A DNA stretch of 64,000 nucleotides, from IMG/VR virus record IMGVR_UViG_3300045974_000132, positions 124,001-188,000 of that record. The stretch is one strand, 5' to 3'. The translations under genes and the position numbers were made by a program. Below are positions 7,639 through 46,226 of the stretch, one piece after another. The notes beneath the pieces were generated by a model, which saw only the letters and a list, made by a program, of their open reading frames with translations, was not told the DNA's origin and did not search any database. Position 1 is the stretch's first letter. Every line of letters begins with the position of its first letter.

Positions 7639-7665
7639 GGTATTTTTCTTATTTCAAGAAACGAC

Positions 7666-29592: not shown

Positions 29593-29677
29593 TGGTGCCC
29601 AGGAAGGGACTCGAACCCTTACACCTTTCGATACCAGAACCTAAATCTGGCGCTTCTACCAATTTAGCCACCTGGGC
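29593..29677 (-). tRNA. tRNA-Leu(UAG)
   Basis: Cloverleaf GCCCAGG/CCTGGGC, loop TTTAGGT, long variable arm, TTCGAGT, ACCA. Confidence 0.95.
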
Positions 29678-29683
29678 ATTGAT

Positions 29684-29856
29684 GCTGATGTTGGGCGCTA
29701 CTCCAACTCCGGTACTCCACGTCAGTTACAGTGTCCTTCGGGTGTTCGACGCTTCGCCAACACATACGTGCCGCTACTGGTGGTCTACAATGTGCCCTTC
29801 GCTGCTTACTGCTCCGGCCTTGTTCTCTGACAGGTCTGCTTTCCCTGTAGATCAGC
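29684..29856 (-). ncRNA. putative structured ncRNA immediately upstream of tRNA-Leu
   Basis: Intergenic, closed by GCTGAT/ATCAGC, with internal hairpins and a T-arm-like GTTGG-AGTAGCGC-CCAAC. Confidence 0.45.
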
Positions 29857-29865
29857 TAAACTATT

Positions 29866-30120
29866 TTACTTTCCAAACAAACGATCATGCAGCTTTATAG
29901 AGATATACATACCTATAGCAGCACCCGTGCCACAGTAGGGTATCAGTACCCATCCGTCTCGCACAATCAAACCTACTAGCCAAACATCAGCACAAGCCAT
30001 AAAGTAGGATGTAATAACAATAGAAGCCATCTTGTTTGCTATTACGTTTTTGTGCTGAAAGCCTTTGAGGAAGACAGAAGCAAATGTCGCCAATGCTGCC
30101 AGCAAATAACTTGTACTCAT
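29866..30120 (-). CDS. small membrane protein
   Basis: Three hydrophobic segments. Confidence 0.65.
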   Translation of the reverse strand: MSTSYLLAALATFASVFLKGFQHKNVIANKMASIVITSYFMACADVWLVGLIVRDGWVLIPYCGTGAAIGMYISIKLHDRLFGK

Positions 30121-30395
30121 ATTAAACACAGATGATCGTAAGATTGCCGACGATCATACTTTCGGAATTCTAAATTGAAGCCGTCTGTTACAGGAGTAGG
30201 TGTTTTAGGGTACTCGGCATCCGGTGACAAAATCCGTCGCATTAAACCAGGCATGTTCATATGCACCTTCATACACTCTGCAAATATATCAACAGCTGGG
30301 TACTTTTTGTACAGACGATCAACGAAAGCACGATAGCTTTTACTTTTGTACCGTTTCTTGTTCCGGGTCTTGTGCGTTTTCATTATATTCTCATT

Positions 30396-30534
30396 AGTGA
30401 AAGGGATACACGATTCCCCTAAGTCCCTGCTTTCCATCGTGCTACCTCGCAGCGATACCGAGGAGGTTATGCAGGGTGCTTTGCGTTTAGGATTTAACCC
30501 TACTTCCACCGACTTATCTGAGCAGAATTTCACT
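30396..30534 (-). ncRNA. putative structured RNA / leader
   Basis: Nested stems AGTGAAA/TTTCACT, AAGTC/GACTT, CCCTGC/GCAGGG, ACCTC/GAGGT; downstream gene probably starts at 30383. Confidence 0.4.
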
Positions 30535-30593
30535 GCATTGTTTCAGCGTTACGGTGCGATGTGGCGTCTACGGCCCTAAACTTATTGCATTGG

Positions 30594-30974
30594 TCAATCA
30601 ATGATCTGCCAAATCTTACCTTGTGCACGGATTTCAGATACCGTGTCCAGCGAGACTGTACGATATTGAGCCAACTTAATATCGAACACTGTCAAGTACG
30701 GACGTTCGTCTTTCTCAACATTGTTTTGACCGCCCTTTAAGAAAGCCTTGACTCCAAGGCGACCTGTGAGGGTGCGCTTCTCTCCACTAAGCTTGATATA
30801 GTCCACAGAAACGAACAAGCCGTTCTGACGAACAATGAAAGTGCGAAGATTGACACGATTAAGCTGTTTGACCTCTTTCGGCATCTTCTTGGAAGCTTTA
30901 GGCTTGTGGCTGTTAGCGACTGAAGTGGACACCGAAAGATTTTGAGCAGTAGTAAAAGCAGATTGAACTTGCAT
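30594..30974 (-). CDS. SH3/Sm-like beta-barrel protein (DUF2693/WYL-like)
   Basis: VDYIKLSGEKRTLTGRLGV...VFDIKLAQYRTV pattern. Confidence 0.6.
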   Translation of the reverse strand: MQVQSAFTTAQNLSVSTSVANSHKPKASKKMPKEVKQLNRVNLRTFIVRQNGLFVSVDYIKLSGEKRTLTGRLGVKAFLKGGQNNVEKDERPYLTVFDIKLAQYRTVSLDTVSEIRAQGKIWQIID

Positions 30975-31128
30975 GATATTTCTCCGAAAAGTAGTTGCAT
31001 GTGAAAGTAATCGGGACACCCCAACTACTAGCGATCAACCTGCTACAGTTGACCCGCCGTAAGCCTCGTCACACATAACAACCTATCTAGCAAATCTCTA
31101 CTACTGGCTACAAAACTTGTTTACAGTT

Positions 31129-31317
31129 TTACTTAATCATTACATTGCAGGAACAGATTCCTGTATCACCTTTAGGGCCTATTAAACCCTGAGGCCCAGT
31201 AGGACCCGGAGGACCCGGCTGGCTAGGGGGCAGTTTACGAAGTGCTTTCTTCACTGCCTTAGCAACCAATTTCTTGATCTGCTTTTTACTAAAATGAGTG
31301 CATCCGCAGGGAGTCAT
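31129..31317 (-). CDS. small collagen-repeat protein with terminal Cys pairs
   Basis: GPPGPTGPQGLIGPKGDTG; CGC and CSC at the termini. Confidence 0.6.
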   Translation of the reverse strand: MTPCGCTHFSKKQIKKLVAKAVKKALRKLPPSQPGPPGPTGPQGLIGPKGDTGICSCNVMIK

Positions 31318-31319
31318 GC

Positions 31320-31520
31320 TTACACCTTCTCAGTAACGGAAACTACATTTGCACTCTTCCCAGGGACATGCGTAACAGTTGCCTGGGTATAAGACTTACC
31401 TACCGCTTTGAGTGCAGCGTTCTTGATTGTATCTTTGCTTGAGTCTTCCCGAACGGTAATCTTCTTTACGAATACTCCGTCCAGTGTTACATCAAGACTT
31501 GTATGGCCACCGTCATACAT
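31320..31520 (-). CDS. stand-alone LeuRS C-terminal-domain-like protein
   Basis: VTLDGVFVKKITV...IKNAAL...HVPGKSANVV matches the bacterial LeuRS CTD pattern VQVNGKxRxxIxV...YVPGKLxNxV; GGGAG SD. Confidence 0.6.
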   Translation of the reverse strand: MYDGGHTSLDVTLDGVFVKKITVREDSSKDTIKNAALKAVGKSYTQATVTHVPGKSANVVSVTEKV

Positions 31521-31521
31521 G

Positions 31522-32007
31522 TTAGCTGTACTCCCCTGTTGATTGAGCTTCTGAGGTAAGCTGGTCGAGAACTTCTTTCTGATAGACAACCGGATCAAAA
31601 GCAGCAATACGCTCGCCCAAGACTTTGGAGTATTCAGTCATATGGATACGCTGTTTCACCAAACGGGCACGTTCACCGTCTGTGATAAAAGAAGCGTGGA
31701 ACGTAGGATTGTACTCGATAAAGTTATTGATCGCTTCAACCTTCTTATCGAGTTCGGCTTTCTCGTTAACAACCCGTTGTTGGTGCGGTTCAAGCTTTTG
31801 GGCAGATTGTTCCGCAGCACGTTCTTCTTCAAGCCTAGCGAGTTCCATATTGTTTCCTTGAGGGATTGTATAAACAGCATCGCTACCCTTGAAAGAAGCG
31901 GCAGCTTTCTTCAAAGCTTCAGAAGGTTCAGGCGGGCTATCAATAAGGGCCGAAAGATGGGCAGCAGCTTTCTCAGGGAGATTAACCGATTCACTGTCTT
32001 GACTCAT
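31522..32007 (-). CDS. crAss001_48-related domain protein
   Basis: PHQQRVVNEKAELDKK...LVKQRIHMTEYSKVLGERIAAF. Confidence 0.6.
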   Translation of the reverse strand: MSQDSESVNLPEKAAAHLSALIDSPPEPSEALKKAAASFKGSDAVYTIPQGNNMELARLEEERAAEQSAQKLEPHQQRVVNEKAELDKKVEAINNFIEYNPTFHASFITDGERARLVKQRIHMTEYSKVLGERIAAFDPVVYQKEVLDQLTSEAQSTGEYS

Positions 32008-32654
32008 TTTGCTTCCCTTGTGTAAGTAGTTTGTCTTTAGCGTCAAGTTCCTTCATAAGCTTTTCAAGCTGTTGACGCGCTTTAGGATCTTTACTGTGGT
32101 ACAACTCAAAGCATTGACTGCCTGGAGCCAACCAAGAATCTTTGAATTTTACAGCGTTGCGATACATCAGTGAGCTTTCTTAGAAAGGTATTCTTTACAA
32201 ATATGGAGTTTCTTCTTTTTCTTAGACATAAGACGCCAACCCGCTGAAGTATTTACCCAACGCAACTTTTTCTTACCGCAATACTGACATGTTACCTTTT
32301 TTGGTTTGTGAAAGTTTGTAGAGTTTTCACAACCAGGGTAACTTGAATAGAGAGGGCGTTCATCCTGTCCGTCAGCGCTTCTCCCGCACATCAAATCATC
32401 CCAAGCATCTGCTTCATGGTCAAAACAATCACTCACAGAAGTTCTCCTAACCAGACCCCATTGCAAAGCTACCCACTACACGTAGCTCTTTTGTCTCAAC
32501 AAGCTCTGTGCAGGTTGTACGGGATTTATCGTCCCAGATACCCGGATAGTCACTGCTCGGGAATTGAATATCTGCCCAACCGCAGGCACCACTTTCATTA
32601 CCTGCTTCGACTAGCACCATATGAGTACGGTCATACGGCATTTCGTTGAACTCT

Positions 32655-33107
32655 TTATCTGTTATCTGCAACAAGAAGAAAGGCATTTTGATGCTCCGAC
32701 GTTTGGGTAGAGTGGCTCTTAAGCCAAGGTATAAATTGTGCGTCATCTACTAGGATGTGCTTTGTCAGCCAGTCAACAACAAGAGTACGCAACTCTTCTA
32801 GGATGCACGTACTAGCATCAATGAACAAAGGTCGAGAAATCTGCTCGAACAGGTTGTCAAGCTGATACGTCAAGGCACGATGTTGCATTACATGACTAGC
32901 GTATCCTTCCCACCCTTTAATTAGTTCTTCTTCATGTTTAAGATGCGTCCATACGTATTCGTACAACTCTGCGGCAATATCAAAAGAACTTAGCAAAGAA
33001 GTTCCGTTTAAGATAGCTTCCAGCCTATTACTAAGGTAGAACAACTTGATATGTTCTTCGTCAATAACAGGAACACCTAAAAGGTAGCTTTCGACAGAGA
33101 TAGTCAT
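32655..33107 (-). CDS. bacteriohemerythrin
   Basis: IDEEH, HLKHEE, HVMQH, WLTKHILVDD: full di-iron ligand set. Confidence 0.9.
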   Translation of the reverse strand: MTISVESYLLGVPVIDEEHIKLFYLSNRLEAILNGTSLLSSFDIAAELYEYVWTHLKHEEELIKGWEGYASHVMQHRALTYQLDNLFEQISRPLFIDASTCILEELRTLVVDWLTKHILVDDAQFIPWLKSHSTQTSEHQNAFLLVADNR

Positions 33108-33205
33108 TTTATTATGTCCTTAAACACACTTACAGTAGCACACTATCTTAGTTTGAATGTCGGCTCTTATAACAATCTATATAGATAATGTGCTTTCGTA
33201 AGTGT

Positions 33206-33590
33206 GCCGCTCACCTATTTTGGTAATAAGGACTCCGTCATTATCAGGAGAGTGAGCGGCTTAACAAACCAAAGTCTGTTAGTGACCCCATCCGTTTAGG
33301 TGCTGTTAGGCAGCCTTCCGGAAAGACGCATCATTCGCGGCAATTACAAGTTTAGCCCGGTTTAACGAGAGTACAATGCTCGGATCGTTCTTTATCAACT
33401 ACTCATGCCCAATCGAAACCAGGTCAGGCCCATCAGGATCGTTCTATGTATCACCCACCCCGGTGACCTCAGCCTTGCGGTAGGACCTTTCGGCACACAG
33501 AACGATTTTGGTGGACCTGGGGAGAATCGAACTCCCGTCTTGAACACTTTTATTTCAAAAGTCTCATAAGCAAAGTTGTTCCGGTAGCTA
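33206..33590 (-). ncRNA. ssrA: circularly permuted (two-piece) tmRNA
   Basis: T-arm and CAGGTCC-ACCA (33509-33540) lie upstream of the 5' strand GGGCCTG (33431); G3-U70 pair; tag ORF (A)ANDASFRKAA* at 33306-33341; outer boundaries approximate. Confidence 0.9.
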
Positions 33591-33646
33591 ATCGGCTTTA
33601 CTTACATACGATCATATTCCTTAACACGCCAATGATTACGTGTTAG

Positions 33647-34180
33647 TTAAGACCTACGCTTGATTGACATAAAGCCGATCATACCAAGGCCGGCAAACAT
33701 CATAGCGTAGTTCTCAGGTTCGGGCACAGAAGAAATGACGCTTGCTGCGATAGGAGCAACAAGTGACGCATCAATGTGACCGCCCAAAGCTTGGAAGGCA
33801 CCTACTTGATTACCATATAGTGTCAGCACAAACGGTGACTTGGTATTAACAGAGATAACACCAAAGTCAAAGCCCGGACCAGTAAGGATAGGGGCGCCGA
33901 AAGCACCATTCAGATTAGTCTTAGACCAATCAATGTTCAAGCCAGAACCACCGAAAGAGGATACAACATGATACGTACCCAGAACAGCAGTAGTCGGTAG
34001 CGTAAACGTAAATACGTCAGAGCCACCATCAAGAACAGAAGGTCCAAAGTTGGCGAAGTCAGCAACGTAACTCTTGGAAGCTGTGTCAAAAGACAAGCCA
34101 GAAGAACTATCCGATGCCCAAGCGCCTTGCAAACCCATTGACAGAACAAGGGCAACAAGCAGAGTTTTAAACCACTTCAT
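33647..34180 (-). CDS. PEP-CTERM exosortase-target surface protein
   Basis: Signal peptide MKWFKTLLVALVL...AWA; C-terminal VPEPENYAMMFAGLGMIGFMSIKRRS. Confidence 0.9.
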   Translation of the reverse strand: MKWFKTLLVALVLSMGLQGAWASDSSSGLSFDTASKSYVADFANFGPSVLDGGSDVFTFTLPTTAVLGTYHVVSSFGGSGLNIDWSKTNLNGAFGAPILTGPGFDFGVISVNTKSPFVLTLYGNQVGAFQALGGHIDASLVAPIAASVISSVPEPENYAMMFAGLGMIGFMSIKRRS

Positions 34181-34237
34181 TAAGAAATACTCCCTAGGTG
34201 AGTTGAAAAGAAATTTTATTATGTAAGTAAAATTGGG

Positions 34238-34450
34238 GAGAAGTGCTTGCCCTACTACTAAGAGGCTCGAAATGGACGATGAAACCAAAGCGAGATACAG
34301 GCTATTTTGAAAGTCGCCGAGACGACTTGTTAGCAAGCACTTCTCTTACACGGGTGAGAGGTATTGAACGTTTTCCACCGAAAGGAAAACCAACGAGGCA
34401 CAACGTACAGGCTATTTATCGTCGCCGAGACGACTAGTCCAATACCTCTC
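34238..34450 (-). ncRNA. two tandem related structured RNA modules
   Basis: 13 bp and 11 bp perfect closing stems; both contain AGTCGTCTCGGCGAC and AAATAGCCTGTA. Confidence 0.65.
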
Positions 34451-34455
34451 AAAAC

Positions 34456-34530
34456 TGGTTGAGGATGACGGGATCGAACCGACGACCCTCTGCTTGCAAG
34501 CAGAGGCTCTCCCAACTGAGCTAATCCCCA
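34456..34530 (-). tRNA. atypical tRNA-Ala(UGC), possibly pseudo
   Basis: U1-A72, G3-U70, ACCA; palindromic anticodon arm with a 6-nt loop TTGCAA. Confidence 0.75.
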
Positions 34531-34631
34531 AACACTTGCAGTCTACTGCCGGACTTCAGGACTTAGTATAAGTCGTCCTCGGCTCCGCATCTTTTTAACA
34601 CAAGTCCTGCGGTTGCTTGTGAGCAAGTGTT
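34531..34631 (-). ncRNA. putative structured RNA abutting tRNA-Ala
   Basis: Closing stem AACACTTGC/GCAAGTGTT. Confidence 0.45.
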
Positions 34632-35055
34632 TTAAACTTTATTTCGTAGGTAGAGGAGGCAACACAATAGTTATTGCCGCGTAGTGGCCGTGATGTACGG
34701 CGTTATAAGCTTTTTGCAATTCAGGCTCTTTCAGAAGTCTGTCAGTGGCAGAACGCAGCTTCTCAAGCTTTCTGCCTCTAGGCTTCCTACCATAAATTGA
34801 AATGTCGGTAAGATGCGGGTGCAAATCTGTAAACGTAATTGGGCACTTTGCTGGTGAACCTACAAAATCAATATTTACCGAACTAGTTCTACCGTAATCA
34901 CACTTGTTAAATGTTATTACAAGCTCCCGCTGTGCAAGCCCAGGTGATAGGTGGTTGGATACGTCTAAGATACTATCAACAAACTCAGCATGTGCGGTCA
35001 AACTGACGGGACTGCTCTTTTTTGACATTTTAGTTTACCTTTGACTTGAGAAACT

Positions 35056-35097
35056 TGATGGGTTGTGACAAGCTAGTGCCGACTGAGCTAAAACCCG
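35056..35097 (-). pseudogene. internally deleted tRNA remnant
   Basis: CGGGTTTTAGCTCAGTCGG...AGC joined to AACCCATCA; anticodon and T arms missing. Confidence 0.45.
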
Positions 35098-35433
35098 AAA
35101 CTTTATGACGCACCCTTTGCAATCTTCTCAAAGTGACGAGTCAAACTTACAGTGAGCGATTTTTCTATCTGCTGCACAGGCTCAAGTAAAGGATCATTAG
35201 AAGCATAATAAAAAGAACCTCGAAGCCTGTAAGCATGTATAAGGGAAGCGATTAACTTTAGAGCCTCTGCATCACCTTTACAGTACGCACGAATTTCCTT
35301 AATAGCTTTTTTCTCTTTTACTATGTTATCCTTAGACAGTATAGTACCGCGAAAGCGGCAAGCATACATCAAAGTTCGGAGCAGTTCGTACTGCTCCCGC
35401 GTCATCTTATTTCGCTTAGGTATCATAATAGCT

Positions 35434-35748
35434 CTAGCACCACTCTATCTTATTGTTTCGGATGAAGTAATGACTCTTGCAAGGAAACTGCATGTTGCCG
35501 ACAGAAGGGCTAAACGTAACACTGACTGAATCAGTAGCTACCCAAGTATAGTCCCAGCCGAACGTAGTCATTGTGCCGTCTTCTTGCTTGTAGTTTATAG
35601 GCATCACAGTCTTAACACGACACCCACAAGCACACATATGGATTGCACAACTATACTTTTCAGATATGTAGATCACGCCGTCTTTCAGTTCGTCATCAGG
35701 CGGTACAGTATCTACAAACTCAGGTGTTATCGTTGTCAGTCTTGGCAT
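35434..35748 (-). CDS. DUF6527-like protein
   Basis: GVIYISEKY...HMCACGCR...W...TFSPSVGN...CKSHYFIRNNKIEW; start moved to ATG 35748. Confidence 0.75.
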   Translation of the reverse strand: MPRLTTITPEFVDTVPPDDELKDGVIYISEKYSCAIHMCACGCRVKTVMPINYKQEDGTMTTFGWDYTWVATDSVSVTFSPSVGNMQFPCKSHYFIRNNKIEWC

Positions 35749-35755
35749 AGCACAT

Positions 35756-36069
35756 ACCCTTAAATATTTAGAACAACACCCTGACCTCCAGTGTAACTGC
35801 CGGGTGAGAGAAGGGTTTACCGTCTGCTGGTCGGGCACTTGGCGTTGAAGACTAATCAACAACGTTGAGTCCAAGTGTCTCACTCCCGTTAATCGTCGCC
35901 AAGGGCGTTGATCTAAATATTCGTAAGGGTCTTGTACAGGCATTACTCACCATATGTCAGTCAGGCCGTACTCATAGAGTGACGCTGGTCCAACCCATGT
36001 ATGTTGTTTGGTCCCTGCTTCGGAGAATGACTTTTTCGACGGTATGCATTCCGTCCCGAAATACAAGAC
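35756..36069 (-). ncRNA. two adjacent stem-closed structured RNA modules
   Basis: Long imperfect closing stem 35756-35930 and GTCTTGTA/TACAAGAC closing 35929-36069. Confidence 0.55.
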
Positions 36070-36081
36070 TTTAAACTTAAA

Positions 36082-36546
36082 CTACTCCATCAATTCAGCA
36101 GTAGCAATTACTGAACTTACATCAAGGTCGTAATACTCATGAGACTCCTTACCCAGTGGCCCATAACAAGCACTACTTTCAGGATACATCAAGTACAAAC
36201 CGGCTCTACTAGAAGACAAGGTTCGTGTCTTTATAATACCTTCGTCTTCAGGATCCAAAGAATCGTCAGCTTCTAAAACATAATTAAGCTTATGGCCTTC
36301 GGGGAGCCGTTCAAAATACATTTCAGTATCGGCAATGTATTCAGCAATACTTTTATGAAACCAAAACTGCGAAATAGCTCCAGTCACACCTAAGCTGAGA
36401 ATTTCATCCCCTCCTTCAGGTTGTTCAGAGATTTCTCCAGCTTCATCAGTATCAAGCGCAAGCTCATGTAAGTAACTAACAAGATCAAAAGCTTCTGCAA
36501 CAGAAAGAGCAACTTCCGAAAACTTTAAAGGTGTATTTGTGGTCAT
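36082..36546 (-). CDS. acidic hypothetical protein
   Basis: 154 aa ORF with GAGGA SD. Confidence 0.6.
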   Translation of the reverse strand: MTTNTPLKFSEVALSVAEAFDLVSYLHELALDTDEAGEISEQPEGGDEILSLGVTGAISQFWFHKSIAEYIADTEMYFERLPEGHKLNYVLEADDSLDPEDEGIIKTRTLSSSRAGLYLMYPESSACYGPLGKESHEYYDLDVSSVIATAELME

Positions 36547-36562
36547 GTTATATCAGTCCTCG

Positions 36563-37238
36563 AATAGAAATTGTAATAGACGCGATTACCTAGTATTAGT
36601 CTATTTGCACTTCACTTCACTTCATCCTAGTATGGGTAGTGTTACGTTCTCGCTACCAACGCCTGAAGATCACACTCTACAGGTAGTGTTTTATATACAT
36701 CTACTTCTATTGACTTTCAATAAGTGAAGGTTCTACATTCGCTACACCCTAACGCTCTCGTGTCATAGCCTCCGCGCATTCGGGCAGGCCGTCTGGTTGC
36801 AAGAGTAGGTGGTTAAATACAGAACCTTCACGTATTTAAAGTACATGCTACTTATTTACACTTTTGTTTAAGGGTGCCCAGGCTTGATTAGGGCTCAGCA
36901 ACACACTGGCAGTTGCCTCCGGTGAGTCGTGCGTCCACGTTGCTCACACCATTTCCTATCAATGCCTTCGCAGCACAAGCTAGTGTATTTCCCGCAAAGA
37001 TGAATGGTTAGACCAAGCAGAGCTTTTACCCTATAGACCATGTGAAAGCGTGAACGGGGTTAACGGACTTGTGTTTCATGTTTCTGCATCACATCTAGCG
37101 TGTCCATCCACGCCGACCCTTAAACAAAAGAAGTATATATTGCCACACTCACTAACGGCAGCTATGATTTTCTTGCTTACATTGACGCAGCCTAGGCTTT
37201 TGAGGCATCTGCGGGTCATCAGTGAGTGTGGGAATATA
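36563..37238 (-). ncRNA. array of four stem-closed structured RNA modules downstream of tRNA-Thr(AGU)
   Basis: Closing stems at 36563/36711, 36714/36841, 36861/37130 (15 bp perfect) and 37143/37231 (11 bp perfect); no credible ORF. Confidence 0.6.
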
Positions 37239-37242
37239 AACT

Positions 37243-37318
37243 TGGTGCCCTGTGTCTGAATCGAACAGACGACCTCTCGCTTACTAGGCGAGTGCTGCTA
37301 CCTCTGAGCTAACAGGGC
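37243..37318 (-). tRNA. tRNA-Thr(AGU)
   Basis: GCCCTGT/ACAGGGC acceptor, CTCGC-CTAGTAA-GCGAG anticodon arm, ACCA. Confidence 0.92.
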
Positions 37319-38109
37319 TTTTGTTACTTGAAACTTTTTACAGTTTTACTTTCGACCGTAGTATTTTAGCTTACGCTGGGTAAACCGATAGTTGTACCGA
37401 TAAGCAGAAGCTAGATCCTTCAATAAGAAACTAAACCTACGTTGCACTATACGTTGCTGCGTTCGGACTGTACGAAGTTTGCTCCTGATCGAAGTTGTCG
37501 AACGATTGTAGTACAACCTCTTCGACCAAAACTTACGAACATAAGGAGACCAATATTCACCAGCACGAATTACATAGGTGGCCATTATGTTTTCACCCAT
37601 TGGGCTAAGAGAGGGCCGTTCGTTGAGTTGTCCAAATAACGCTGATACTGAAACAGAAGATTATCCAGCCAGCTATTACGACTTCGCAGGTTTATCTTTT
37701 TCATAAGCCTCTGCATGTCATCACTCTCTGGCGCAAGCTCTAAGAGTTTTGCAATTGCGGGTGCATATCGAGTATAGTCCGTACGCAGCGGCATAGGAAA
37801 CTCGGGCATTTCGTATATGCGATCATCTTGCACTGCCGAAAGAAAAACCTTAGCAGTATGGACGAAGCCGTTGTACACGTTTGCAAAGCACGGGAAGGTA
37901 ACTATGTAGCAGTCAGTGTCAAGCATCTTTCCTGTATGCTTTACCCAAACATTAGCATAACGCAAGGCAGATTCTTGATTACGCAAATTGGACTTCAGAT
38001 GAAAGTCTTTGCAGTTGTGAATACCCATGTCCATAGAACGGACTTGGTAGCCACCTGCTCCCGCAACGAAATAAACAAGAATCATTTTAGCCTACCTTGA
38101 TACAAAAGT

Positions 38110-38145
38110 TGGTGCCCCCGGTCGGAATCGAACTGTTAACTGAGC
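38110..38145 (-). pseudogene. 3' remnant of disrupted resident tRNA (Thr-like)
   Basis: AGCTCAGTT...GTTCGATTCCGACCGGGGGCACCA; acceptor strand complementary to GCCCCCG at 38882-38888. Confidence 0.85.
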
Positions 38146-38154
38146 TTGTGTATA

Positions 38155-38239
38155 TGGTGCTGAGGGCGGGACTCGAACCCGCGTGTCCTTTCGGAGCCGG
38201 ATTACAAATCCGGTGCTGTCGCCACTGAGCCACCTCAGC
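38155..38239 (-). tRNA. tRNA-Thr(UGU) with long variable arm
   Basis: GCTGAGG/CCTCAGC, CCGGA-TTTGTAA-TCCGG, variable arm TCC-GAAA-GGA, ACCA. Confidence 0.9.
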
Positions 38240-38242
38240 AAT

Positions 38243-38839
38243 TTAAACTTTCCTACCTCTAAAATAATCGAATGGGTTTATACCATAAGCTATAGCCCAT
38301 TTACGCACTGCGTTATCACTAACGCCGTAATGCTCACCCACCGCTACCCATGATTGCCTACTTAGGCGTTTCATAAGGTTTGCTTTACTTGGTTTTTTCT
38401 GAGTGCTACCCGCAATGAAACATTCTCGGTGAGAACTCTGACATACCGATCCGCAGTAGCTACTGTTGTCCGTAGGCATTTGACAGACTTTACAGCGGGT
38501 ACATTTTGCAAGAACTTTATCAATACAGCCGTTGTGTCGATACGAATAAATGCGGTGCTCAGAAAAGTACCCAATCGAATCAAGCCACCCATGAAGTTTG
38601 GCATGACTAGCACGGCTAAGAACTAGCAGGTTTGAAGGTGCATTATTTACCTTGTTAAGATCAAGATGGTGTACGTGTTCCGTGCGCTTTAGAGGTCGTC
38701 CTAGCGCCCGCTCTGCCACCAAGATATGCTCATAGACATACCCTTCATAAGCACCTGACTTATCGGCCCGGTCGTGAGTCGGCTGCCAAACTAGCAAGTA
38801 GCCCACATTATTTACGATCCGAACACGGTTGCGTATCAC
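38243..38839 (-). CDS. HNH homing endonuclease with C-terminal HTH
   Basis: YVYEHILVAERALGRPL...VHHLDLNKVNN...NLLVL...H; C-terminal SWVAVGEHYGVSDNAVRKW. Confidence 0.9.
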   Translation of the reverse strand: MIRNRVRIVNNVGYLLVWQPTHDRADKSGAYEGYVYEHILVAERALGRPLKRTEHVHHLDLNKVNNAPSNLLVLSRASHAKLHGWLDSIGYFSEHRIYSYRHNGCIDKVLAKCTRCKVCQMPTDNSSYCGSVCQSSHRECFIAGSTQKKPSKANLMKRLSRQSWVAVGEHYGVSDNAVRKWAIAYGINPFDYFRGRKV

Positions 38840-38877
38840 AGCGTTTCCTCTTCAAAATCAACTGCACGAATCTTCAT

Positions 38878-38888
38878 GCTACGGGGGC
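38878..38888 (-). pseudogene. 5' remnant of disrupted resident tRNA (Thr-like)
   Basis: GCCCCCGTAGC, 25 nt downstream of an AACTGTAAA box. Confidence 0.7.
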
Positions 38889-38925
38889 AAATCGTTGACT
38901 ATATGTATTATTTTTACAGTTTGTA

Positions 38926-40491: not shown

Positions 40492-40581
40492 TGGCGGGAG
40501 CGGTGGGATTCAAACCCACGAATGTGTTTCCACATTGCCGGTTTTCAAGACCGGTGTATTCAATCGCTCTACCACACTCCC
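40492..40581 (-). tRNA. tRNA-Ser(UGA)
   Basis: CCGGT-CTTGAAA-ACCGG, long variable arm, G73-CCA; A19/U56 instead of G19/C56. Confidence 0.92.
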
Positions 40582-40588
40582 TAAAACT

Positions 40589-41713: not shown

Positions 41714-41964
41714 AACAACCCCTGTTTATTATTTTTTTGAGTATTGACGACGCTGATTAGGGCGCGTTAACACCCGTACAGCTACCTCCAGCGGAACACC
41801 CAAACAGCCACAAACTAAGGCAGCATCTTGAACAAAGCCCATTTCAGCTATTCGGATCGCTTTTTCAACTTCCCGTGCAGTTTCAAAATCAGTACGTTTC
41901 ACTTTAGCAGATTTCATAGTTATACCACATAAATTTTCTATAGAGCCTTAAATTAGAAAGCTTA

Positions 41965-42297
41965 TGTGGTAAGACTCAGAAGTGCTTAACACCGTCTGAG
42001 TCAAACCGGTGTAGCTTGCGTTGTGCCAAGCAGCAATTCTCGATGGGATAGTATTGAGAAAAGCCGCATTGACTGCACCTTGCAAACTACTGATTATTCT
42101 CGCCTAAAGCGCATGGTCATCACCCTTATATAATGTTCTATATGTATGCTTGTATATAGAACCCTACTTAGATTTAAGAACTATATTAGACGTAACATTA
42201 AGTTACCCTCCAAAAGAGTTCGCTATGAGCGTAGCGGGAGCTTCTGTTCACAAGCTTGCCGGCCCGACTCTCACGGGCAGTACCTAGGGCGAAGAGT
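41965..42297 (-). ncRNA. putative structured ncRNA region
   Basis: Non-coding, hairpin-dense (GACTCAGA/TCTGAGTC, TTCTC/GAGAA, GTTCTATAT/ATATAGAAC, CGCTA/TAGCG). Confidence 0.45.
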
Positions 42298-42303
42298 TAA
42301 AGA

Positions 42304-42738
42304 CTACTTCTTCTTTTTGCTACCGAACGTCATCTTCTTGTAGTCAGAAGGAACGACCAGAGCTTCGGGTTTGATACCACGCAACGAAGGCAGAGGCATC
42401 ACGATACCAGCCAGAGGCAAGTAGTTGGACGACTCGTTACCGTAGTCAATAGCAGTGTCAATATGAGCAAGCATACGCTGGGCTTCAGCGATAGAAGCAC
42501 GGGCATTACGAATCGCCACAACTTGCTGAAACTTGACCGTCTCTGCCTGGTCGATGATAGCGATGATCGAATCAGCAGCACGTTCTGCCTTTTCAACGTC
42601 ACGCTGCTCCAGACGCTTCTTCATAACCGCTTGCAAATGCTCAGGAAGCTTCTCGCTGACTTTGGCTTCCTTCGACAAGTCGGTGTCAGCCAGCATTGCC
42701 AAAGCTTCGAGATTGATTTGGTTGGTACAACACGACAT
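42304..42738 (-). CDS. hypothetical coiled-coil protein
   Basis: 144 aa ORF with AAGGAG SD. Confidence 0.65.
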   Translation of the reverse strand: MSCCTNQINLEALAMLADTDLSKEAKVSEKLPEHLQAVMKKRLEQRDVEKAERAADSIIAIIDQAETVKFQQVVAIRNARASIAEAQRMLAHIDTAIDYGNESSNYLPLAGIVMPLPSLRGIKPEALVVPSDYKKMTFGSKKKK

Positions 42739-42757
42739 ACGTTTTCTCCTTGGAAAG

Positions 42758-42973
42758 TTATGTTTGCATTTCAGTTAAGATTACCTTAACGCCTTTAAGA
42801 CGTTCAGCAATCTCAGGATCAGACTTAGCCAATTTCTTAGCATTGTGAGTCTCACCTAGCTGGACTACAACTTCGCAGCCTAGAGACTCTAAATAATGAG
42901 CTATAGCAGCCATTGCATAGCCTTTACCGGACTTATCAGGCCCTTCAATACTCACTCTTAGAGTATCGGGCAT
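42758..42973 (-). CDS. small P-loop protein (thymidylate-kinase-like N-terminus only)
   Basis: VSIEGPDKSGKG; only 71 aa. Confidence 0.55.
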   Translation of the reverse strand: MPDTLRVSIEGPDKSGKGYAMAAIAHYLESLGCEVVVQLGETHNAKKLAKSDPEIAERLKGVKVILTEMQT

Positions 42974-42983
42974 ATTAAACTCC

Positions 42984-43802
42984 TTATGAAGTAGCTGCCA
43001 CTATATGAATAGAAGGAGCAGCAAGTTTTGCATACAACTCAGTCACACCGTTTTCTTTATACAAGTGCGACAAGAAGGAACGAACAAAGCCTGAACGAAC
43101 AATGTCTTCTAACTGAAAGACTGTTATTGGGATGTCAAAGCCATTACGTTGGGCAAAGGCATGCAACCACAAAAGCCCACTTTCTCCCTTTAGATCGTTT
43201 TGGAAGGGATCTCCAAGAAGTACAATACGACCTGACTCATAGCGAGTAATGATTGCGATCATGTCCTCTTCGTCAAGGTTTTGAGCTTCGTCAATGATTA
43301 CAAACTTGTTGATGAATGAACGCCCACGTACATACTCAAAGGGAAGCATTTCAATCTGCCCTTTGTTAAGCATGTAATCTACTTTAGGACCAAGATGGCG
43401 ACGTAAGCTATCAAGAATAGGCATTAGCAAAGGAGTCATCTTATCTTCTTTGCTGCCTGGCAAGAAACCTACTGTTTCACCGCGCAACACATTAGCGCGT
43501 GTTAGAACAAACCCATCAACAAGGTCTGCTAAAAACATCTGAGCAGCAACCCCTGCTGCACAGTATGTCTTACCTACGCCCGCTGGCCCAATTGCCGCAC
43601 ATACTTCACTGTCCTTAAGAGCATTGATAAAATGACGCTGATTAACAGTCTTGGGAAGGAGTTCAACACGCCACGATTCGCGCTCACGAAACTTTTTATG
43701 CTTCTCACTTTCGGCTATACGCTCAAGATCCCGCTGCGTGTCACGGAGTCGACTCTTATTAGAGGACTTAGGGATACTCTTGACCTTATTGCTGCGCGCC
43801 AT
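42984..43802 (-). CDS. phoH: PhoH-like ATPase
   Basis: GPAGVGKT, GFLPG, RGRSF, IIDEAQN, GDPFQND, DIVRS. Confidence 0.95.
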   Translation of the reverse strand: MARSNKVKSIPKSSNKSRLRDTQRDLERIAESEKHKKFRERESWRVELLPKTVNQRHFINALKDSEVCAAIGPAGVGKTYCAAGVAAQMFLADLVDGFVLTRANVLRGETVGFLPGSKEDKMTPLLMPILDSLRRHLGPKVDYMLNKGQIEMLPFEYVRGRSFINKFVIIDEAQNLDEEDMIAIITRYESGRIVLLGDPFQNDLKGESGLLWLHAFAQRNGFDIPITVFQLEDIVRSGFVRSFLSHLYKENGVTELYAKLAAPSIHIVAATS

Positions 43803-43842
43803 ATTGAACCTTTGATGATATGGGAGGAAGAAACTTTAAACT

Positions 43843-44340
43843 CTGTACGACTCTCAGGTGGGGTCTAGCTTGCAAGGCCAAACCACACGAGGCAGTCGTG
43901 CACAACTACTTCTATTCACTAGAGCAAGGTAATAGCTTACCTATTAATCTATGCTAGGTTGCTCTAGCTAACCGTCCGACCTTTGGCTGTCGTCCCCGCT
44001 CAAGCTGGCTTCACTGAGTTTCCTCTCCACTGTCTCGATCTGCTGCTCCGAAGAGCTTCAACAAGGACACGCTTGACCCACTGTGCAATCTAAATACTCA
44101 GCTAGACACCTAAGGGGATAGGTACCGGCTTATGCTAGACCGTTACAAGTATTCGATAAGATTAACAACTTTCCATCGACGTACCCTAGCGCGTATAACG
44201 AAATCACGGCTCCAACATTGTAAGACTTTCCAATCATTGCTTAAACCGCTGTACCCTGGCCGGGGCCTTCAATTCTGCTATACTCGGGCTATTCGGTAAC
44301 TGACTACACAGACTACTCTTGCATTTTTCGGTGGTGGCCT
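43843..44340 (-). ncRNA. large ornate ncRNA candidate (ROOL-like)
   Basis: About 500 nt ORF-free, multi-hairpin region between tRNA-linked genes; family assignment from recalled resemblance only. Confidence 0.5.
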
Positions 44341-44601
44341 TTAATGTGCGCCTCACGGCGTTAAGGTTTCTGCAATTTTTGTATTTCTTCAAATCTACCT
44401 AAAGCTGTGGCCAGTTCAGCGCGAGCTTTACCCACTTGCTTTTCAGCAACACCGTATAGGTGCGCATGAGCAGCATCCCAAGTGTCGAAGCGTAAAATTT
44501 CGCGCATCGCAGGAGGATTAAAGTCAGACGCAACCTCTTCACGACTTATATTAGTTGATATACCTGGGTAGCGTAAAACAAATTGAATTTTAGTATCCAT
44601 G

Positions 44602-45180
44602 TTAACTACCTGCGCGTCGTTTTGCATCGTTAAACTTAGATAACTGATCTTCAGTTAAGAACTGTTCCCAGCCCTCTAAGATTAGATCCGGATGAGAAGA
44701 CAAGATTGAAACAATGTCATTCAAGTCTTTGAACTCGCGCTTCAACGTGTTAGCACCAAACAACTTTAGAACAACCATTGCCTCCTTAGAAGCAACAAGT
44801 ATCCCGTCATGGTTTACTGCGGTGTGTATCACCTTCTTAGCAACGGGTATAGGTAGTTCAATTGAAGCAGGTGTTGTAAGCTCAATATCAACCTGCGTTT
44901 TGTTTTCTTGAAAGGCACCTGGCCTATAACGCTTGAAGCCCTTGACTTCAGTAGGTACTAAAGCTTTACTAAGAAACAGAAGGTCTACGTCTTCAGTGTA
45001 ACGAGGCTTTGCATAGAAAGACATTGCAAGTCCGCCGATTAAAACACCGGGAGCTTCTGTACCTACTTTAGATTTAATCCAAGCAAGTAAAGCATGTTGC
45101 ACTTCAGGAACTAAGGCTACATGCTTTACCTCAGATACTGCCGACGCATACACAGACATGTTACGAAGTATCAGTTCCAT
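44602..45180 (-). CDS. AbiEii/MenT-like nucleotidyltransferase
   Basis: LIGGLAM...PRYTEDVDL and LKL...KDLND motifs of the DNA polymerase beta-like NTase fold. Confidence 0.75.
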   Translation of the reverse strand: MELILRNMSVYASAVSEVKHVALVPEVQHALLAWIKSKVGTEAPGVLIGGLAMSFYAKPRYTEDVDLLFLSKALVPTEVKGFKRYRPGAFQENKTQVDIELTTPASIELPIPVAKKVIHTAVNHDGILVASKEAMVVLKLFGANTLKREFKDLNDIVSILSSHPDLILEGWEQFLTEDQLSKFNDAKRRAGS

Positions 45181-45193
45181 CGTTGCTCCTAAA

Positions 45194-45274
45194 GAAAGAA
45201 GACCGGGCTTCCACCGGCAGCAAGATTAAGCCGAAGCAACCTCTCTGCGTCAGATTTGGTATCCGACGACTTTC
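45194..45274 (-). ncRNA. tRNA-like cloverleaf RNA
   Basis: GAAAG/CTTTC closing stem, CGTCGGA/TCTGACG arm, TTCG-capped arm, GCCGG-TGGAAGC-CCGGT T-arm-like. Confidence 0.45.
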
Positions 45275-45309
45275 TGGTAGGCCCGGTCAGACTTGAACTG
45301 ACGACCAAA
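45275..45309 (-). pseudogene. 3' half of disrupted resident tRNA (Ile2-like)
   Basis: TTTGGTCGTCAGTTCAAGTCTGACCGGGCCTACCA. Confidence 0.9.
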
Positions 45310-45323
45310 TACTTAAACTAACT

Positions 45324-45401
45324 TAGTGGGCCCAACTGGATTTGAACCAGTGACCCTCCGGTTATGAGCCGGGCGCTGCTAACCAACTGAGCTATAGGCC
45401 C
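45324..45401 (-). tRNA. tRNA(CAU), probably Ile2 (or elongator Met); encoded end CTA not CCA
   Basis: GGGCCTA/TGGGCCC, CCCGG-CTCATAA-CCGGA, TTCAAAT. Confidence 0.88.
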
Positions 45402-45402
45402 T

Positions 45403-45993
45403 CTAAGTAAGCTTTCGTCCTCTACCTAGCTTAGGCAATAGAGTACGGCAAATTTTGGTATAGCTGCTTTTAACATGACTATAAGTATCACCGCGCAACA
45501 TTGAGAACAGGGTAAGAGGATGCACATCTAACTCTTCTGCTAGTTCATGATGGGACAATTCATACTCAGAAAAGTATTTCCTAAGGCGTTTAACTTCACT
45601 ATCTAAAAACTTTGAATTAGGTCTAAGCTCACCTCGAGGATCAACGCGCAAACCTGTTGCCAGTGCGTGTTTCACATTACCGGAATTAGTTGTCAATTCA
45701 AGATTTGTTAATCGACAGTTAGCTTTAATCCCATCACGATGGTTTAACTGTAGTTCAGAGTCCTCTGGTATCCCCTTAAAGTGCGCCCATACAAGCCGGT
45801 GCAATTGTATCTGACGAATCTTTTTAGAGTTAGGATCTTGCCAAGATAGCTTTCGATATCCTTTTGAAGAAGGAGTCTTAGCTACTTCCTTACCTGAAAT
45901 CAAATTAAAAGCTTTACCAGACTTCGTAACTTTTAACTTACCTGAGTTTATCAGGCTAAGAAAGAAGCGTTCATTTCTAAGGTTTGCCGCCAT
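45403..45993 (-). CDS. HNH homing endonuclease with C-terminal HTH
   Basis: LHRLVWAHF...NHRDGIKANCRLTNLELTTNSGNVKHA; GELRPNSKF; LSHHELAEELDV. Confidence 0.9.
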   Translation of the reverse strand: MAANLRNERFFLSLINSGKLKVTKSGKAFNLISGKEVAKTPSSKGYRKLSWQDPNSKKIRQIQLHRLVWAHFKGIPEDSELQLNHRDGIKANCRLTNLELTTNSGNVKHALATGLRVDPRGELRPNSKFLDSEVKRLRKYFSEYELSHHELAEELDVHPLTLFSMLRGDTYSHVKSSYTKICRTLLPKLGRGRKLT

Positions 45994-46033
45994 GAGGTTA
46001 GAGCAGAGTAGTGGTATAGCTCATAAATTAGTA

Positions 46034-46065
46034 TCCTCTGCTCTGACCAACTGAGCTACAGGCCT
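46034..46065 (-). pseudogene. 5' half of disrupted resident tRNA (Ile2-like)
   Basis: AGGCCTGTAGCTCAGTTGGTCAGAGCAGAGGA; acceptor pairs with CGGGCCT at 45279-45285. Confidence 0.9.
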
Positions 46066-46074
46066 AAAACTTTA

Positions 46075-46226
46075 TAAGGTTGCTTACATTCTCGATCACC
46101 TACCACCAGTAAGTCAGTGTCGATAGTTGTGATACGCTCAACGTGCAGCCCACAACTCCTATGCACGTTAAAGCTCAACTTCATCTGGACTATACATCGA
46201 CCAGTCTAGGTGTTAAGCAAACCTTA
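46075..46226 (-). ncRNA. putative stem-closed structured RNA
   Basis: TAAGGTT(T)GCTTA(A)CA closing stem; internal AACGTGCA/TGCACGTT. Confidence 0.5.

What the first reader, a model, noticed from the sequence alone, without database searches (positions are those of the whole stretch)
29684..46226. Dispersed array of more than ten stem-closed non-coding modules interleaved with tRNAs
Seen: repeated 80-270 nt ORF-free units, each closed by a terminal helix of 6-25 bp: 29684-29856, 33125-33206, 34238-34345, 34356-34450, 34531-34631, 35756-35930, 35929-36069, 36563-36711, 36714-36841, 36861-37130, 37143-37231, 45194-45274 and 46075-46226. They are packed end to end with tRNAs and often bordered by the same AAGTTT-type AU-rich linker that precedes the tRNAs. 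Inference: a battery of stable small RNAs cut from tRNA-operon transcripts, possibly decoys for anticodon nucleases or other RNA-sensing defences, protein sponges or antitoxin mimics.
Basis: partly seen in the sequence, partly recalled or inferred. Interest (0 to 1): 0.72.

Follow-up and report, generated by a model that had tools for sequence, protein, structure and literature searches.

The report
Phage island of conserved structured RNAs

Summary
Nine of the 13 listed units are real. Four are not supported: 29684-29856, 36563-36711 and 45194-45274 fold no better than shuffles and have no relatives, and 37143-37231 rests on folding energy alone.

The window is part of a 286-kb jumbo-phage genome from a pond metagenome. 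All genes in the region lie on the minus strand.

Three syntenic relatives were found, at about 45% protein identity. They carry homologues of most modules. These are as conserved as, or more conserved than, the neighbouring protein genes, and they show many compensatory base-pair changes. The 270-nt unit has 24 of 73 pairs compensatory, and the 175-nt unit has 26 of 49.

None of the listed units matches any Rfam family.

Its orthologue in a relative passes Rfam's threshold.

Two tRNA genes are split by cassettes that carry an HNH endonuclease gene plus a replacement tRNA.

Best reading: an RNA island of independent stable RNA genes. They are probably co-transcribed with tRNAs from a phage promoter motif and cut apart at AAGUUU linkers, at tRNA ends and at ribozyme sites. 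T4's species 1 and 2 RNAs are the closest analogue.

No RNA data exist. Nothing supports the decoy or sponge ideas.

The parts
36861..37130 (-). 270-nt multi-helix RNA closed by a 15-bp helix. It is the best-conserved module and matches no Rfam family.
   Evidence: Homologues lie at L007 10784-11059 (86% identity), L014 12695-12990 (72%) and, in part, L008 5860-6125. RNAalifold on three sequences gives 73 pairs, 24 of them compensatory, against 0-3 when partners are slid. The closing helix is fully rewritten in L014 yet stays complementary. There is no Rfam match at E<=10.
35756..35930 (-). 175-nt structured RNA with a long closing helix.
   Evidence: z = -4.7. Homologues lie at L007 15490-15650 and L008 9493-9662. 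Of 49 pairs, 26 are compensatory, against 2-5 when slid. It sits next to a different gene in each phage. In L008 it is directly preceded by the AAACTGTAAA motif.
36714..36841 (-). 128-nt structured RNA closed by an 11-bp helix.
   Evidence: z = -4.7. The homologue lies at L007 11058-11200. Five pairs are compensatory, against 0-1 when slid.
35929..36069 (-). 141-nt structured RNA with a highly conserved 5' core.
   Evidence: It is 97% identical to L007 over 75 nt and 76% identical to L008 over 155 nt. The closing helix covaries in L008, with 4 compensatory pairs against 0 when slid.
34356..34450 (-). Member 1 of a four-member RNA family with invariant AGUCGUCUCGGCGAC and AAAUAGCCUGUA.
   Evidence: z = -5.1. 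The paralogue is 34238-34345 and orthologues lie at L007 12504-12602 and L008 6805-6900. The Rfam Pistol hit is weak and rejected.
34238..34345 (-). Member 2 of the same family (paralogue).
   Evidence: z = -4.7. It has a 13-bp closing helix whose inner part differs from that of its paralogue while pairing is kept.
34531..34631 (-). 101-nt RNA closed by a 10-bp helix. Its 3' end abuts the 5' end of tRNA-Ala.
   Evidence: Together with the adjoining tRNA it is 92% identical to L007 12165-12356. It is too similar for covariation. z = -2.4.
33125..33206 (-). 82-nt long bipartite hairpin directly 3' of the tmRNA.
   Evidence: z = -6.8. The L008 homologue at 7592-7680 gives 8 compensatory pairs of 22. 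The element is absent in L007.
46075..46226 (-). About 150-nt structured RNA between the ACP-like gene and the split tRNA.
Evidence: The L007 homologue at 2668-2845 gives 10 compensatory pairs of 38, against 0-1 when slid.
37143..37231 (-). 89-nt unit closed by a 19-bp helix, with no relative found.
   Evidence: z = -4.4 on the minus strand and -2.4 on the plus strand. In L007 an HNH gene occupies this place.
42215..42295 (-). Twister-sister-type ribozyme, three-stem form, directly after the stop codon of the upstream ORF.
   Evidence: RF02681 scores 30.0 bits here (gathering score 34). Orthologues score 37.9 in L007 5219-5299, 32.7 in L015 2907-2988 and 29.5 in L008 2020-2101. P1 and the distal hairpin covary, with 8 compensatory pairs in 5 sequences.
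33215..33604 (-). Permuted (two-piece) tmRNA gene.
   Evidence: RF04321 scores 89.3 bits and ARAGORN reports the tag AANDASFRKAA*.
37243..37318 (-). tRNA-Thr(AGU). It heads the four-module cluster and is followed by CCA-AGUUU.
   Evidence: The AAACTGTAAA motif lies at 37337-37345, just upstream.
34456..34530 (-). tRNA-Ala(UGC) with a 6-nt anticodon loop, flanked on both sides by modules.
45275..46065 (-). tRNA gene split by a cassette: 5' piece 46027-46065, HNH ORF 45403-45993, intact tRNA-Met 45326-45401, 3' piece 45275-45309.
   Evidence: L007 has the same layout, with compensatory acceptor-stem and T-stem changes.
38110..38888 (-). tRNA-Thr(UGU) gene split by a cassette: old 5' piece 38855-38888, HNH ORF 38243-38839, new tRNA-Thr(UGU) 38155-38239, old 3' piece 38110-38135.
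   Evidence: L007, L008 and L014 have the old-type gene intact at this place.
43803..44360 (-). 558-nt ORF-free stretch upstream of phoH, of unknown nature.
   Evidence: Only its first 65 nt are shared with L008 and L015. Their own sequence there gives sub-threshold group I intron hits. The window gives none.
29684..29856 (-). Listed unit that is not supported.
   Evidence: z = -0.1, the end pairing is only about 6 bp, and no homologue was found in relatives.
36563..36711 (-). Listed unit that is not supported.
   Evidence: z = +0.5. L007 has an unrelated 224-nt stem-closed stretch at the same place.
45194..45274 (-). Listed unit that is not supported. It is the leader of the AbiEii-like ORF.
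   Evidence: z = -1.0 and it is absent from L007.

Best explanation
The region is an RNA island of a jumbo phage. It is a minus-strand block that holds tRNA genes, a two-piece tmRNA, a twister-sister ribozyme and at least eight independent genes for structured RNAs of unknown families, mixed with small accessory ORFs and homing-endonuclease cassettes.

Shown:
- The modules are conserved units under selection for RNA secondary structure on the sense strand.
- Each has its 5' and 3' ends paired in a terminal helix.
- They keep their identity while their neighbours change.

Inferred:
- They are co-transcribed with the tRNAs from a phage-specific promoter (the AAACTGTAAA motif).
- They are then released as discrete stable RNAs by cuts at the AU-rich AAGUUU linkers (which fit the RNase E preference), by RNase P at adjoining tRNA 5' ends, and by ribozyme self-cleavage.
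- The terminal helix insulates each fold from its neighbours and protects the ends.

What the released RNAs do is not known. The closest precedent is the pair of small stable RNAs, species 1 and 2 (rnaC and rnaD), in the T4 tRNA cluster.
For: Closing helices are enriched about 15-fold over the genome-wide rate, and six units have z below -4.

Syntenic relatives L007, L008 and L014 were found through a 374-aa neighbouring gene and a conserved RNA core.

Module identity to L007 is 82-97%, against 60-79% for the flanking protein genes.

Compensatory pairs, with the count for slid controls in brackets:
- 270-nt unit: 24 of 73 (0-3).
- 175-nt unit: 26 of 49 (2-5).
- Five others: 5, 4, 8, 10 and 8 (0-2).

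Consensus folding energy is lower on the sense strand for six of the seven sets tested, and the consensus structures include G-U pairs.

The 175-nt module sits beside a different gene in each of three phages.

The AAACTGTAAA motif has 18 copies, all on the coding strand. It lies upstream of tRNAs and of one module in relatives.

AAGTTT occurs 11 times against 2.1 expected in the non-coding DNA.

The twister-sister orthologue in L007 scores above Rfam's threshold.

Analogous stem-closed spacers occur around the tmRNA of Xanthomonas phage Xoo-sp13 and in unrelated viral tRNA arrays, which show compensatory changes between L002 and L004.

In T4, rnaC and rnaD lie in the same kind of place, next to a homing endonuclease.
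Against: There is no RNA evidence at all. The only public runs that hold the sequence are DNA pond metagenomes, so expression, ends and stability are unshown.

The covariation rests on only 2-5 sequences per module, and the structures were predicted from those same sequences.

The promoter and the RNase E site are motif-level inferences. The sigma-70 promoter and terminator scans show no enrichment.

Four of the 13 listed units lack support.

No partner protein was found. The genome has no Ro60, RtcB, RNase III or reverse transcriptase.
Confidence: 0.62

Rival explanations
1. Several of the unknown modules are themselves self-cleaving ribozymes, either new classes or strongly divergent variants. 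Together with the twister-sister unit they would punctuate the polycistronic RNA, freeing tRNAs and separating mRNAs without host nucleases.
For: A twister-sister ribozyme lies in the same island and is conserved in four relatives. Published work reports that self-cleaving ribozymes cluster near each other and near phage genes (PMC4604425, PMC10085705). HDV-like theta ribozymes sit next to phage tRNAs (PMC10879173). The four-member family shares the P1 hairpin and AUAAAUA linker of pistol ribozymes.
Against: No module other than twister-sister reaches even a weak Rfam ribozyme score. The pistol-like family lacks the pseudoknot partner and the P2/P3 junction. The CUGAUGA in 37143-37231 is not followed by a workable hammerhead stem II, GAA and stem III. 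Long closing helices are not specific to ribozymes.
Confidence: 0.2
2. The modules are cis-acting leaders (riboswitches, thermosensors or translational operators) of the ORFs that follow them.
For: Several units end just before a start codon: 33125-33206 before the hemerythrin gene, 35756-35930 before the DUF6527 gene with a possible Shine-Dalgarno AAGGG inside the closing helix, and 45194-45274 before the AbiEii-like ORF.
Against: The 175-nt module precedes three unrelated genes in three phages. Most units are followed by another module or a tRNA, not by an ORF. No riboswitch family matches.
Confidence: 0.1
3. The units are DNA-level elements: palindromic insertions, miniature transposons, or debris of tRNA genes and introns left by homing-endonuclease traffic. 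On this reading they have no RNA function.
For: The island is a hotspot of HNH cassettes and holds tRNA fragments and a tRNA-like remnant. Some listed units (29684-29856, 36563-36711, 45194-45274) show no conservation or structure.
Against: There are no repeated sequence families apart from one paralogous pair. Internal helices covary, not only the terminal repeats. G-U pairs and lower energies mark the sense strand. Conservation equals or exceeds that of the neighbouring protein genes.
Confidence: 0.08

Closest known systems
T4 species 1 and species 2 RNAs (rnaC, rnaD) in the T4 tRNA gene cluster
   Same: They are small RNAs of about 120-140 nt of unknown function. They lie head to tail with tRNAs in a phage tRNA cluster that also holds a homing endonuclease, segB (PMC2330249). 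rnaC folds well above shuffles, with z = -4.6.
   Different: No sequence similarity was seen. T4 has two such RNAs, whereas this island has at least eight, one of them a 270-nt multi-domain RNA. rnaC carries a tRNA-like T arm, which these modules lack. rnaD does not fold better than shuffles.
Twister-sister self-cleaving ribozyme (Rfam RF02681)
   Same: The unit at 42215-42295 and its four orthologues match the model end to end, including P1, the GCUCAU loop strand, P2, and P4 with a GUGAGAGUC loop. The helices covary.
   Different: The window copy scores 30.0 bits, below the gathering score of 34. It lacks one hairpin of the four-stem form. It reads CCCUAGG where the relatives read CCCAAGG.
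Pistol self-cleaving ribozyme (Rfam RF02679)
   Same: The family at 34238-34450 shares the P1 hairpin sequence UCGUCU.GGCGA and the AUAAAUA linker.
   Different: It scores 22.9 bits against a gathering score of 34.5. No segment is complementary to the P1 loop in all four members. There is no P2/P3 pair with a two-nucleotide junction. The helix that closes the unit has its 5' strand upstream of P1, which is a different topology (defining features from PMC4604425).
Ribozymes and large structured RNAs found beside phage tRNAs (theta ribozymes; GOLLD and ROOL)
   Same: They are structured RNAs placed next to tRNA genes in phage genomes (PMC10879173, PMC12286853).
   Different: No Rfam hit to HDV-like, GOLLD or ROOL models was found. 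The sizes and architectures differ.

Membership tests
Twister-sister ribozyme (RF02681) | Covariance-model score at or above the gathering score (34 bits) | tested here: inconclusive
   The window copy scores 30.0 bits. The orthologue in L007 scores 37.9 and passes. L015 scores 32.7 and L008 scores 29.5.
Twister-sister ribozyme (RF02681) | P1 and P2 separated by the conserved internal loop, a multi-stem junction, and a P4 hairpin with a conserved loop, all supported by covariation | tested here: met
   The alignment of five orthologues keeps the loop strands. P1 and the distal hairpin change by compensatory substitutions (8 pairs).
Twister-sister ribozyme (RF02681) | Site-specific self-cleavage | not testable with these tools
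   This needs in-vitro transcription. The window copy has U where the relatives have A in CCCAAGG.
Pistol ribozyme (RF02679) | Pseudoknot between the P1 loop and the P2-P3 junction | tested here: not met
   No complement of the P1 loop UCUCGG is present in all four family members. The feature is taken from PMC4604425.
Pistol ribozyme (RF02679) | P2 and P3 joined on the right by a strictly two-nucleotide (GU) junction | tested here: not met
   In 34356-34450 the GU is part of the closing helix. In 34238-34345 the hairpin abuts the closing helix with no junction.
Pistol ribozyme (RF02679) | Gathering score of 34.5 bits | tested here: not met
   The score is 22.9 bits.
T4-type small stable RNAs of tRNA clusters (rnaC/rnaD) | Encoded within a phage tRNA gene cluster, on the same strand, next to tRNAs | tested here: met
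T4-type small stable RNAs of tRNA clusters (rnaC/rnaD) | Accumulate as discrete stable RNAs processed from the tRNA precursor | not testable with these tools
   No RNA run holds the sequence.
T4-type small stable RNAs of tRNA clusters (rnaC/rnaD) | Sequence or structure homology to rnaC or rnaD | tested here: not met
   A distant blastn of 33100-37400 against 50,697 phage records hit only tRNAs.
Bacterial Y RNA with Ro60 (Rsr) | A Ro60 (TROVE-domain) protein encoded in the same genome | tested here: not met
   PF05731 gives no match in the 286-kb genome. RtcB is also absent.
Retron msr-msd RNA | An adjacent reverse transcriptase | tested here: not met
   PF00078 gives no match in the genome.
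Miniature inverted-repeat elements | Several copies that share internal and terminal sequence | tested here: not met
   Only one pair of modules shares sequence. No other copies occur in the genome.
Group I intron (RF00028), for 43803-44360 | Match to the catalytic core model | tested here: inconclusive
   The window gives no hit at E<=5. Relatives give sub-threshold hits at the syntenic place: L015 35.5 bits, L014 27 and L008 20.8, against a gathering score of 50. Only the first 65 nt are shared with the window.

The most novel reading that the evidence does not exclude
The island may be a largely RNA-run processing system. On this reading several of the unassigned modules, such as the 270-nt multi-domain RNA, the 175-nt RNA or the four-member pistol-like family, are new classes of ribozyme or new large 'ornate' RNAs. 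They would act on the phage's own tRNA/tmRNA transcripts or on host translation RNAs, and they sit beside a known ribozyme as earlier ribozyme discoveries did.
Probability: 0.2. Interest if true: 0.85.

Novelty: new variant of a known kind. Interest (0 to 1): 0.66.

Why it matters
Small stable RNAs in phage tRNA clusters have been known since T4, yet their function is still unexplained.

This island offers a much richer case. A small clade of uncultivated jumbo phages shares at least eight covarying RNA families, absent from Rfam, next to a bona fide self-cleaving ribozyme and a tmRNA.

The finding gives concrete alignments for building new RNA families. It provides candidates for ribozyme assays. 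It is also a natural system for asking why large phages invest about a fifth of a 17-kb block in non-coding RNA.

Similar stem-closed spacers in Xanthomonas phage Xoo-sp13, an isolated phage with a known host, suggest that the question can be taken to the bench.

Tried and rejected
- **Pistol ribozyme for 34238-34450.** Rejected. It lacks the pseudoknot and the P2/P3 junction and scores below threshold.
- **Hammerhead for 37143-37231** (it contains CUGAUGA). By eye, no acceptable stem II, GAA and stem III follow, and Rfam gives no hit.
- **Y RNA/Ro60, retron, RtcB-linked repair and a phage RNase III.** The proteins are absent from the genome.
- **RNase P, SRP, 6S, riboswitch and GOLLD/ROOL identities for the 270-nt RNA.** Rfam gives no match, and comparison with E. 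coli M1 RNA from memory showed only a short AAGUCCG resemblance.
- **Group I intron splicing of the split tRNA at 45275-46065.** The anticodon arm cannot be rebuilt in either the window or L007, so this is not a clean intron.
- **Searches that found nothing more:**
  - The ORF 36085-36546 has no relatives.
  - PhoH has no close relatives in IMG/VR.
  - DNA patterns from three modules found no further viral contigs.
  - The core of the 270-nt RNA found one further viral contig, which is the same record in the metagenome set.
  - In 185,579 prokaryote genomes the same core gave only two chance hits inside coding DNA.
  - L020 is identical to L007 across the aligned 3.2 kb that includes the modules.
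- **Read laying.** It showed only identical DNA in three pond metagenomes, with no variants and no RNA.
- **PHROGs.** It gave no function for the island's proteins.

Full report
**Setting.** The window is bases 124001-188000 of a 286,393-bp virus record with direct terminal repeats, that is, a jumbo phage. The only public runs that hold it are DNA runs of pond metagenomes. Every gene between 29 and 47 kb lies on the minus strand. ARAGORN and Rfam find seven tRNAs (29593-29677, 34456-34530, 37243-37318, 38155-38239, 40492-40581, 45326-45401 and 50039-50123) and a permuted tmRNA at 33215-33604. With curated ORF starts, 3,681 of the 16,801 bases between 29500 and 46300 are neither coding nor tRNA/tmRNA. 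A crude gene call puts about 9% of the whole genome in that class.

- Six units have z-scores between -4.4 and -6.8 on the minus strand and are closed by 10-19-bp helices.
- 36861-37130 has a perfect 15-bp closing helix.
- Five units are weak, with z between -1.8 and +0.5.

A genome-wide scan for perfect inverted repeats that enclose 40-300 nt found 36 of 11 bp or more in 286 kb. Five of them lie in the 3.1 kb between 34238 and 37231, where about 0.3 are expected. Their arms coincide with the borders of the ORF-free gaps. The hexamer AAGTTT on the minus strand touches the non-coding DNA of the region 11 times against 2.1 expected (P = 1.5e-5). It sits after stop codons, after tRNA CCA ends, and before tRNAs and modules.

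**Relatives.** GenBank phages share only tRNAs with this stretch, and the ORF between the modules is an orphan. The 374-aa protein next to tRNA-Ser has homologues at 41-45% identity. Its contigs L007 (16.4 kb) and L008 (10.2 kb) are syntenic with the whole island. The shared order is ACP-like gene, HNH, tRNA-Met, PhoH, the 374-aa gene, tRNA-Ser, tRNA-Thr, tRNA-Ala, tmRNA, hemerythrin and sequestin. A conserved core of the 270-nt unit then found a more distant relative, the viral contig G001, read here as L014.

blastn of the window against L007 shows that the modules are among the best-conserved DNA:

| Stretch | Identity to L007 |
|---|---|
| 37134-36717 (modules) | 86% |
| 34638-34451 (module plus tRNA-Ala) | 92% |
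| 35922-35777 (module) | 82% |
| 36078-36004 (module) | 97% |
| Flanking protein genes | 60-79% |

**Covariation.** Helices were predicted with RNAalifold, and compensatory pairs were compared with the same count after sliding the 3' partners by 1-3 columns.

| Unit | Sequences | Compensatory pairs | Slid controls |
|---|---|---|---|
| 270-nt RNA (36861-37130) | 3 | 24 of 73 | 0-3 |
| 175-nt RNA (35756-35930) | 3 | 26 of 49 | 2-5 |
| 36714-36841 | 2 | 5 | 0-1 |
| 35929-36069 | 3 | 4 | 0 |
| 33125-33206 | 2 | 8 | 0-1 |
| 46075-46226 | 2 | 10 | 0-1 |

For the 270-nt RNA, 98.6% of cells are paired. Its closing helix reads CUUUUGUUUAAGGGU/ACCCUUAAACAAAAG in the window and UUUAUUAGUUCGGCGU/ACGCCGAACUAAUAAA in L014. 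Consensus energies are lower on the sense strand for these six modules, for example -86 against -72 and -27 against -18 kcal/mol; the twister-sister set, the seventh tested, is the exception (-24.0 against -28.3). G-U pairs are kept. This points to RNA rather than DNA structure.

There are caveats. Each set has few sequences, and the structures were derived from those same sequences.

Units 34238-34345 and 34356-34450 are paralogues. With one orthologue each in L007 and L008 they form a four-member family. The family has an invariant hairpin AGUCGUCUCGGCGAC and an invariant AAAUAGCCUGUA, and its closing helices differ inside a shared GAGRRG...CYYCUC frame.

**Independence of the units.** The 175-nt RNA precedes a DUF6527 gene in the window, a sequestin gene in L007 and a 59-aa ORF in L008. 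HNH genes and orphan ORFs come and go between modules. This argues against gene-specific leaders and for free-standing RNA genes.

**Known families.** Rfam gives nothing for the 13 units, even at E<=10, apart from a weak Pistol hit (22.9 bits) on the paralogous family. That family fails the defining pseudoknot and the P2/P3 junction (PMC4604425).

It lies at 42215-42295 and scores 30.0 bits. Orthologues at the same place, right after the upstream stop codon, score 37.9 in L007 (above the gathering score of 34), 32.7 in L015 and 29.5 in L008. P1 and the distal hairpin covary. The window copy reads CCCUAGG where the others read CCCAAGG.

Published work states that self-cleaving ribozymes tend to lie near each other and near phage genes (PMC4604425, PMC10085705). 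It also states that HDV-like theta ribozymes flank phage tRNAs (PMC10879173). This keeps open the idea that some unknown modules are ribozymes.

**Transcription and processing (inferred).** The motif AAACTGTAAA occurs 18 times in the genome, always on the coding strand and mostly between genes. Three copies lie in the island, at 38921, 37345 and 31128. The copy at 37345 sits just upstream of tRNA-Thr(AGU), which heads the run of four modules. In relatives the motif lies upstream of tRNAs and, in L008, directly in front of the 175-nt RNA. Sigma-70-type promoters and intrinsic terminators are not enriched.

The AAGUUU linker fits the AU-rich single-stranded sites that RNase E prefers (general knowledge). 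It is conserved at the 5' border of 35929-36069 in L007 and L008. Module 34531-34631 ends exactly where RNase P would cut tRNA-Ala.

The genome encodes no RNase III, RtcB, Ro60 or reverse transcriptase.

**Generality.** Xanthomonas phage Xoo-sp13 has a comparable tRNA/tmRNA region. Four units closed by 12-17-bp helices lie in the 1.9-kb unannotated gap around its tmRNA. Two unrelated viral contigs with tRNA arrays, L002 and L004, have spacers closed by 12-21-bp helices that start at the tRNA CCA end and differ by compensatory changes. None of these matches Rfam.

T4's rnaC and rnaD lie in the same kind of place, beside the homing endonuclease segB (PMC2330249). rnaC folds well above shuffles and rnaD does not.

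**tRNA debris.** Two tRNA genes are split by cassettes made of an HNH gene plus a complete tRNA. At 38 kb, the relatives still have the uninterrupted old-type tRNA-Thr(UGU). At 45-46 kb, the same split exists in L007, and the two distant halves show compensatory acceptor-stem changes.

**Verdict.** This is a real and conserved battery of structured RNA genes, interleaved with tRNAs, a tmRNA, a ribozyme and mobile endonuclease cassettes. The kind, small stable RNAs of phage tRNA clusters, is old. The number, size and conservation of the members, and their absence from Rfam, are new. Function remains unknown, and nothing here supports the decoy or sponge ideas.

Noticed in passing
window 38110-38888 (-): The resident tRNA-Thr(UGU) gene is split in its anticodon loop by an HNH endonuclease ORF plus a different, 85-nt tRNA-Thr(UGU). 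Relatives L007, L008 and L014 keep the old gene intact. It looks like a homing cassette that brings its own replacement tRNA.
   Followed up: partly
window 45275-46065 (-); L007 2850-3610: A second split tRNA has the layout 5' piece, HNH ORF, intact tRNA-Met, 3' piece. The two halves lie 750 nt apart. Between the window and L007 they differ by compensatory changes in the acceptor stem (A1-U72 to G-C, G3-C70 to A-U) and in the T stem, but the anticodon stem cannot be rebuilt.
   Followed up: partly
window 34456-34530 (-): tRNA-Ala(UGC) has a 6-nt anticodon loop, one U fewer than its orthologues in L007 and L008. ARAGORN reports it as tRNA-??? with a four-base anticodon.
   Followed up: partly
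window 35050-35100 (-): A 42-nt tRNA-like remnant (acceptor 5' strand, D arm, acceptor 3' strand, ending AUCA) lies between two ORFs, with AAGTTT on both sides.
   Followed up: no
window 37337-37345, 38913-38921, 31120-31128 (-) and 15 other places in the genome: The motif AAACTGTAAA lies always on the coding strand and mostly between genes. It is conserved upstream of tRNAs in relatives. It is a candidate phage-specific promoter.
   Followed up: partly
window 43803-44360 (-): This is a 558-nt ORF-free stretch upstream of phoH. Only its first 65 nt are shared with relatives. Their sequence at that place gives sub-threshold group I intron hits (up to 35.5 bits).
   Followed up: partly
window 41918-42214 (-): More conserved hairpins follow the twister-sister unit. 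One example is ACCACAUAAGC...UUUAUGUGGU just before the next ORF, shared with L008, L015 and L016.
   Followed up: no
window 33650-34180, 32658-33107, 46227-46496, 44605-45180 (-): The island's accessory genes include a PEP-CTERM-tailed secreted protein, a hemerythrin, an acyl-carrier-like protein and a weak AbiEii-type nucleotidyltransferase match. The PEP-CTERM tail and the beta-type tmRNA hint at a betaproteobacterial host.
   Followed up: no
L001 (Xanthomonas phage Xoo-sp13) 8208-10109; L002 4760-4975; L004 2206-2743: Stem-closed spacers of 90-210 nt with 12-21-bp closing helices also surround the tmRNA or tRNAs of other phages. None is in Rfam. L002 and L004 differ by compensatory changes.
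   Followed up: partly
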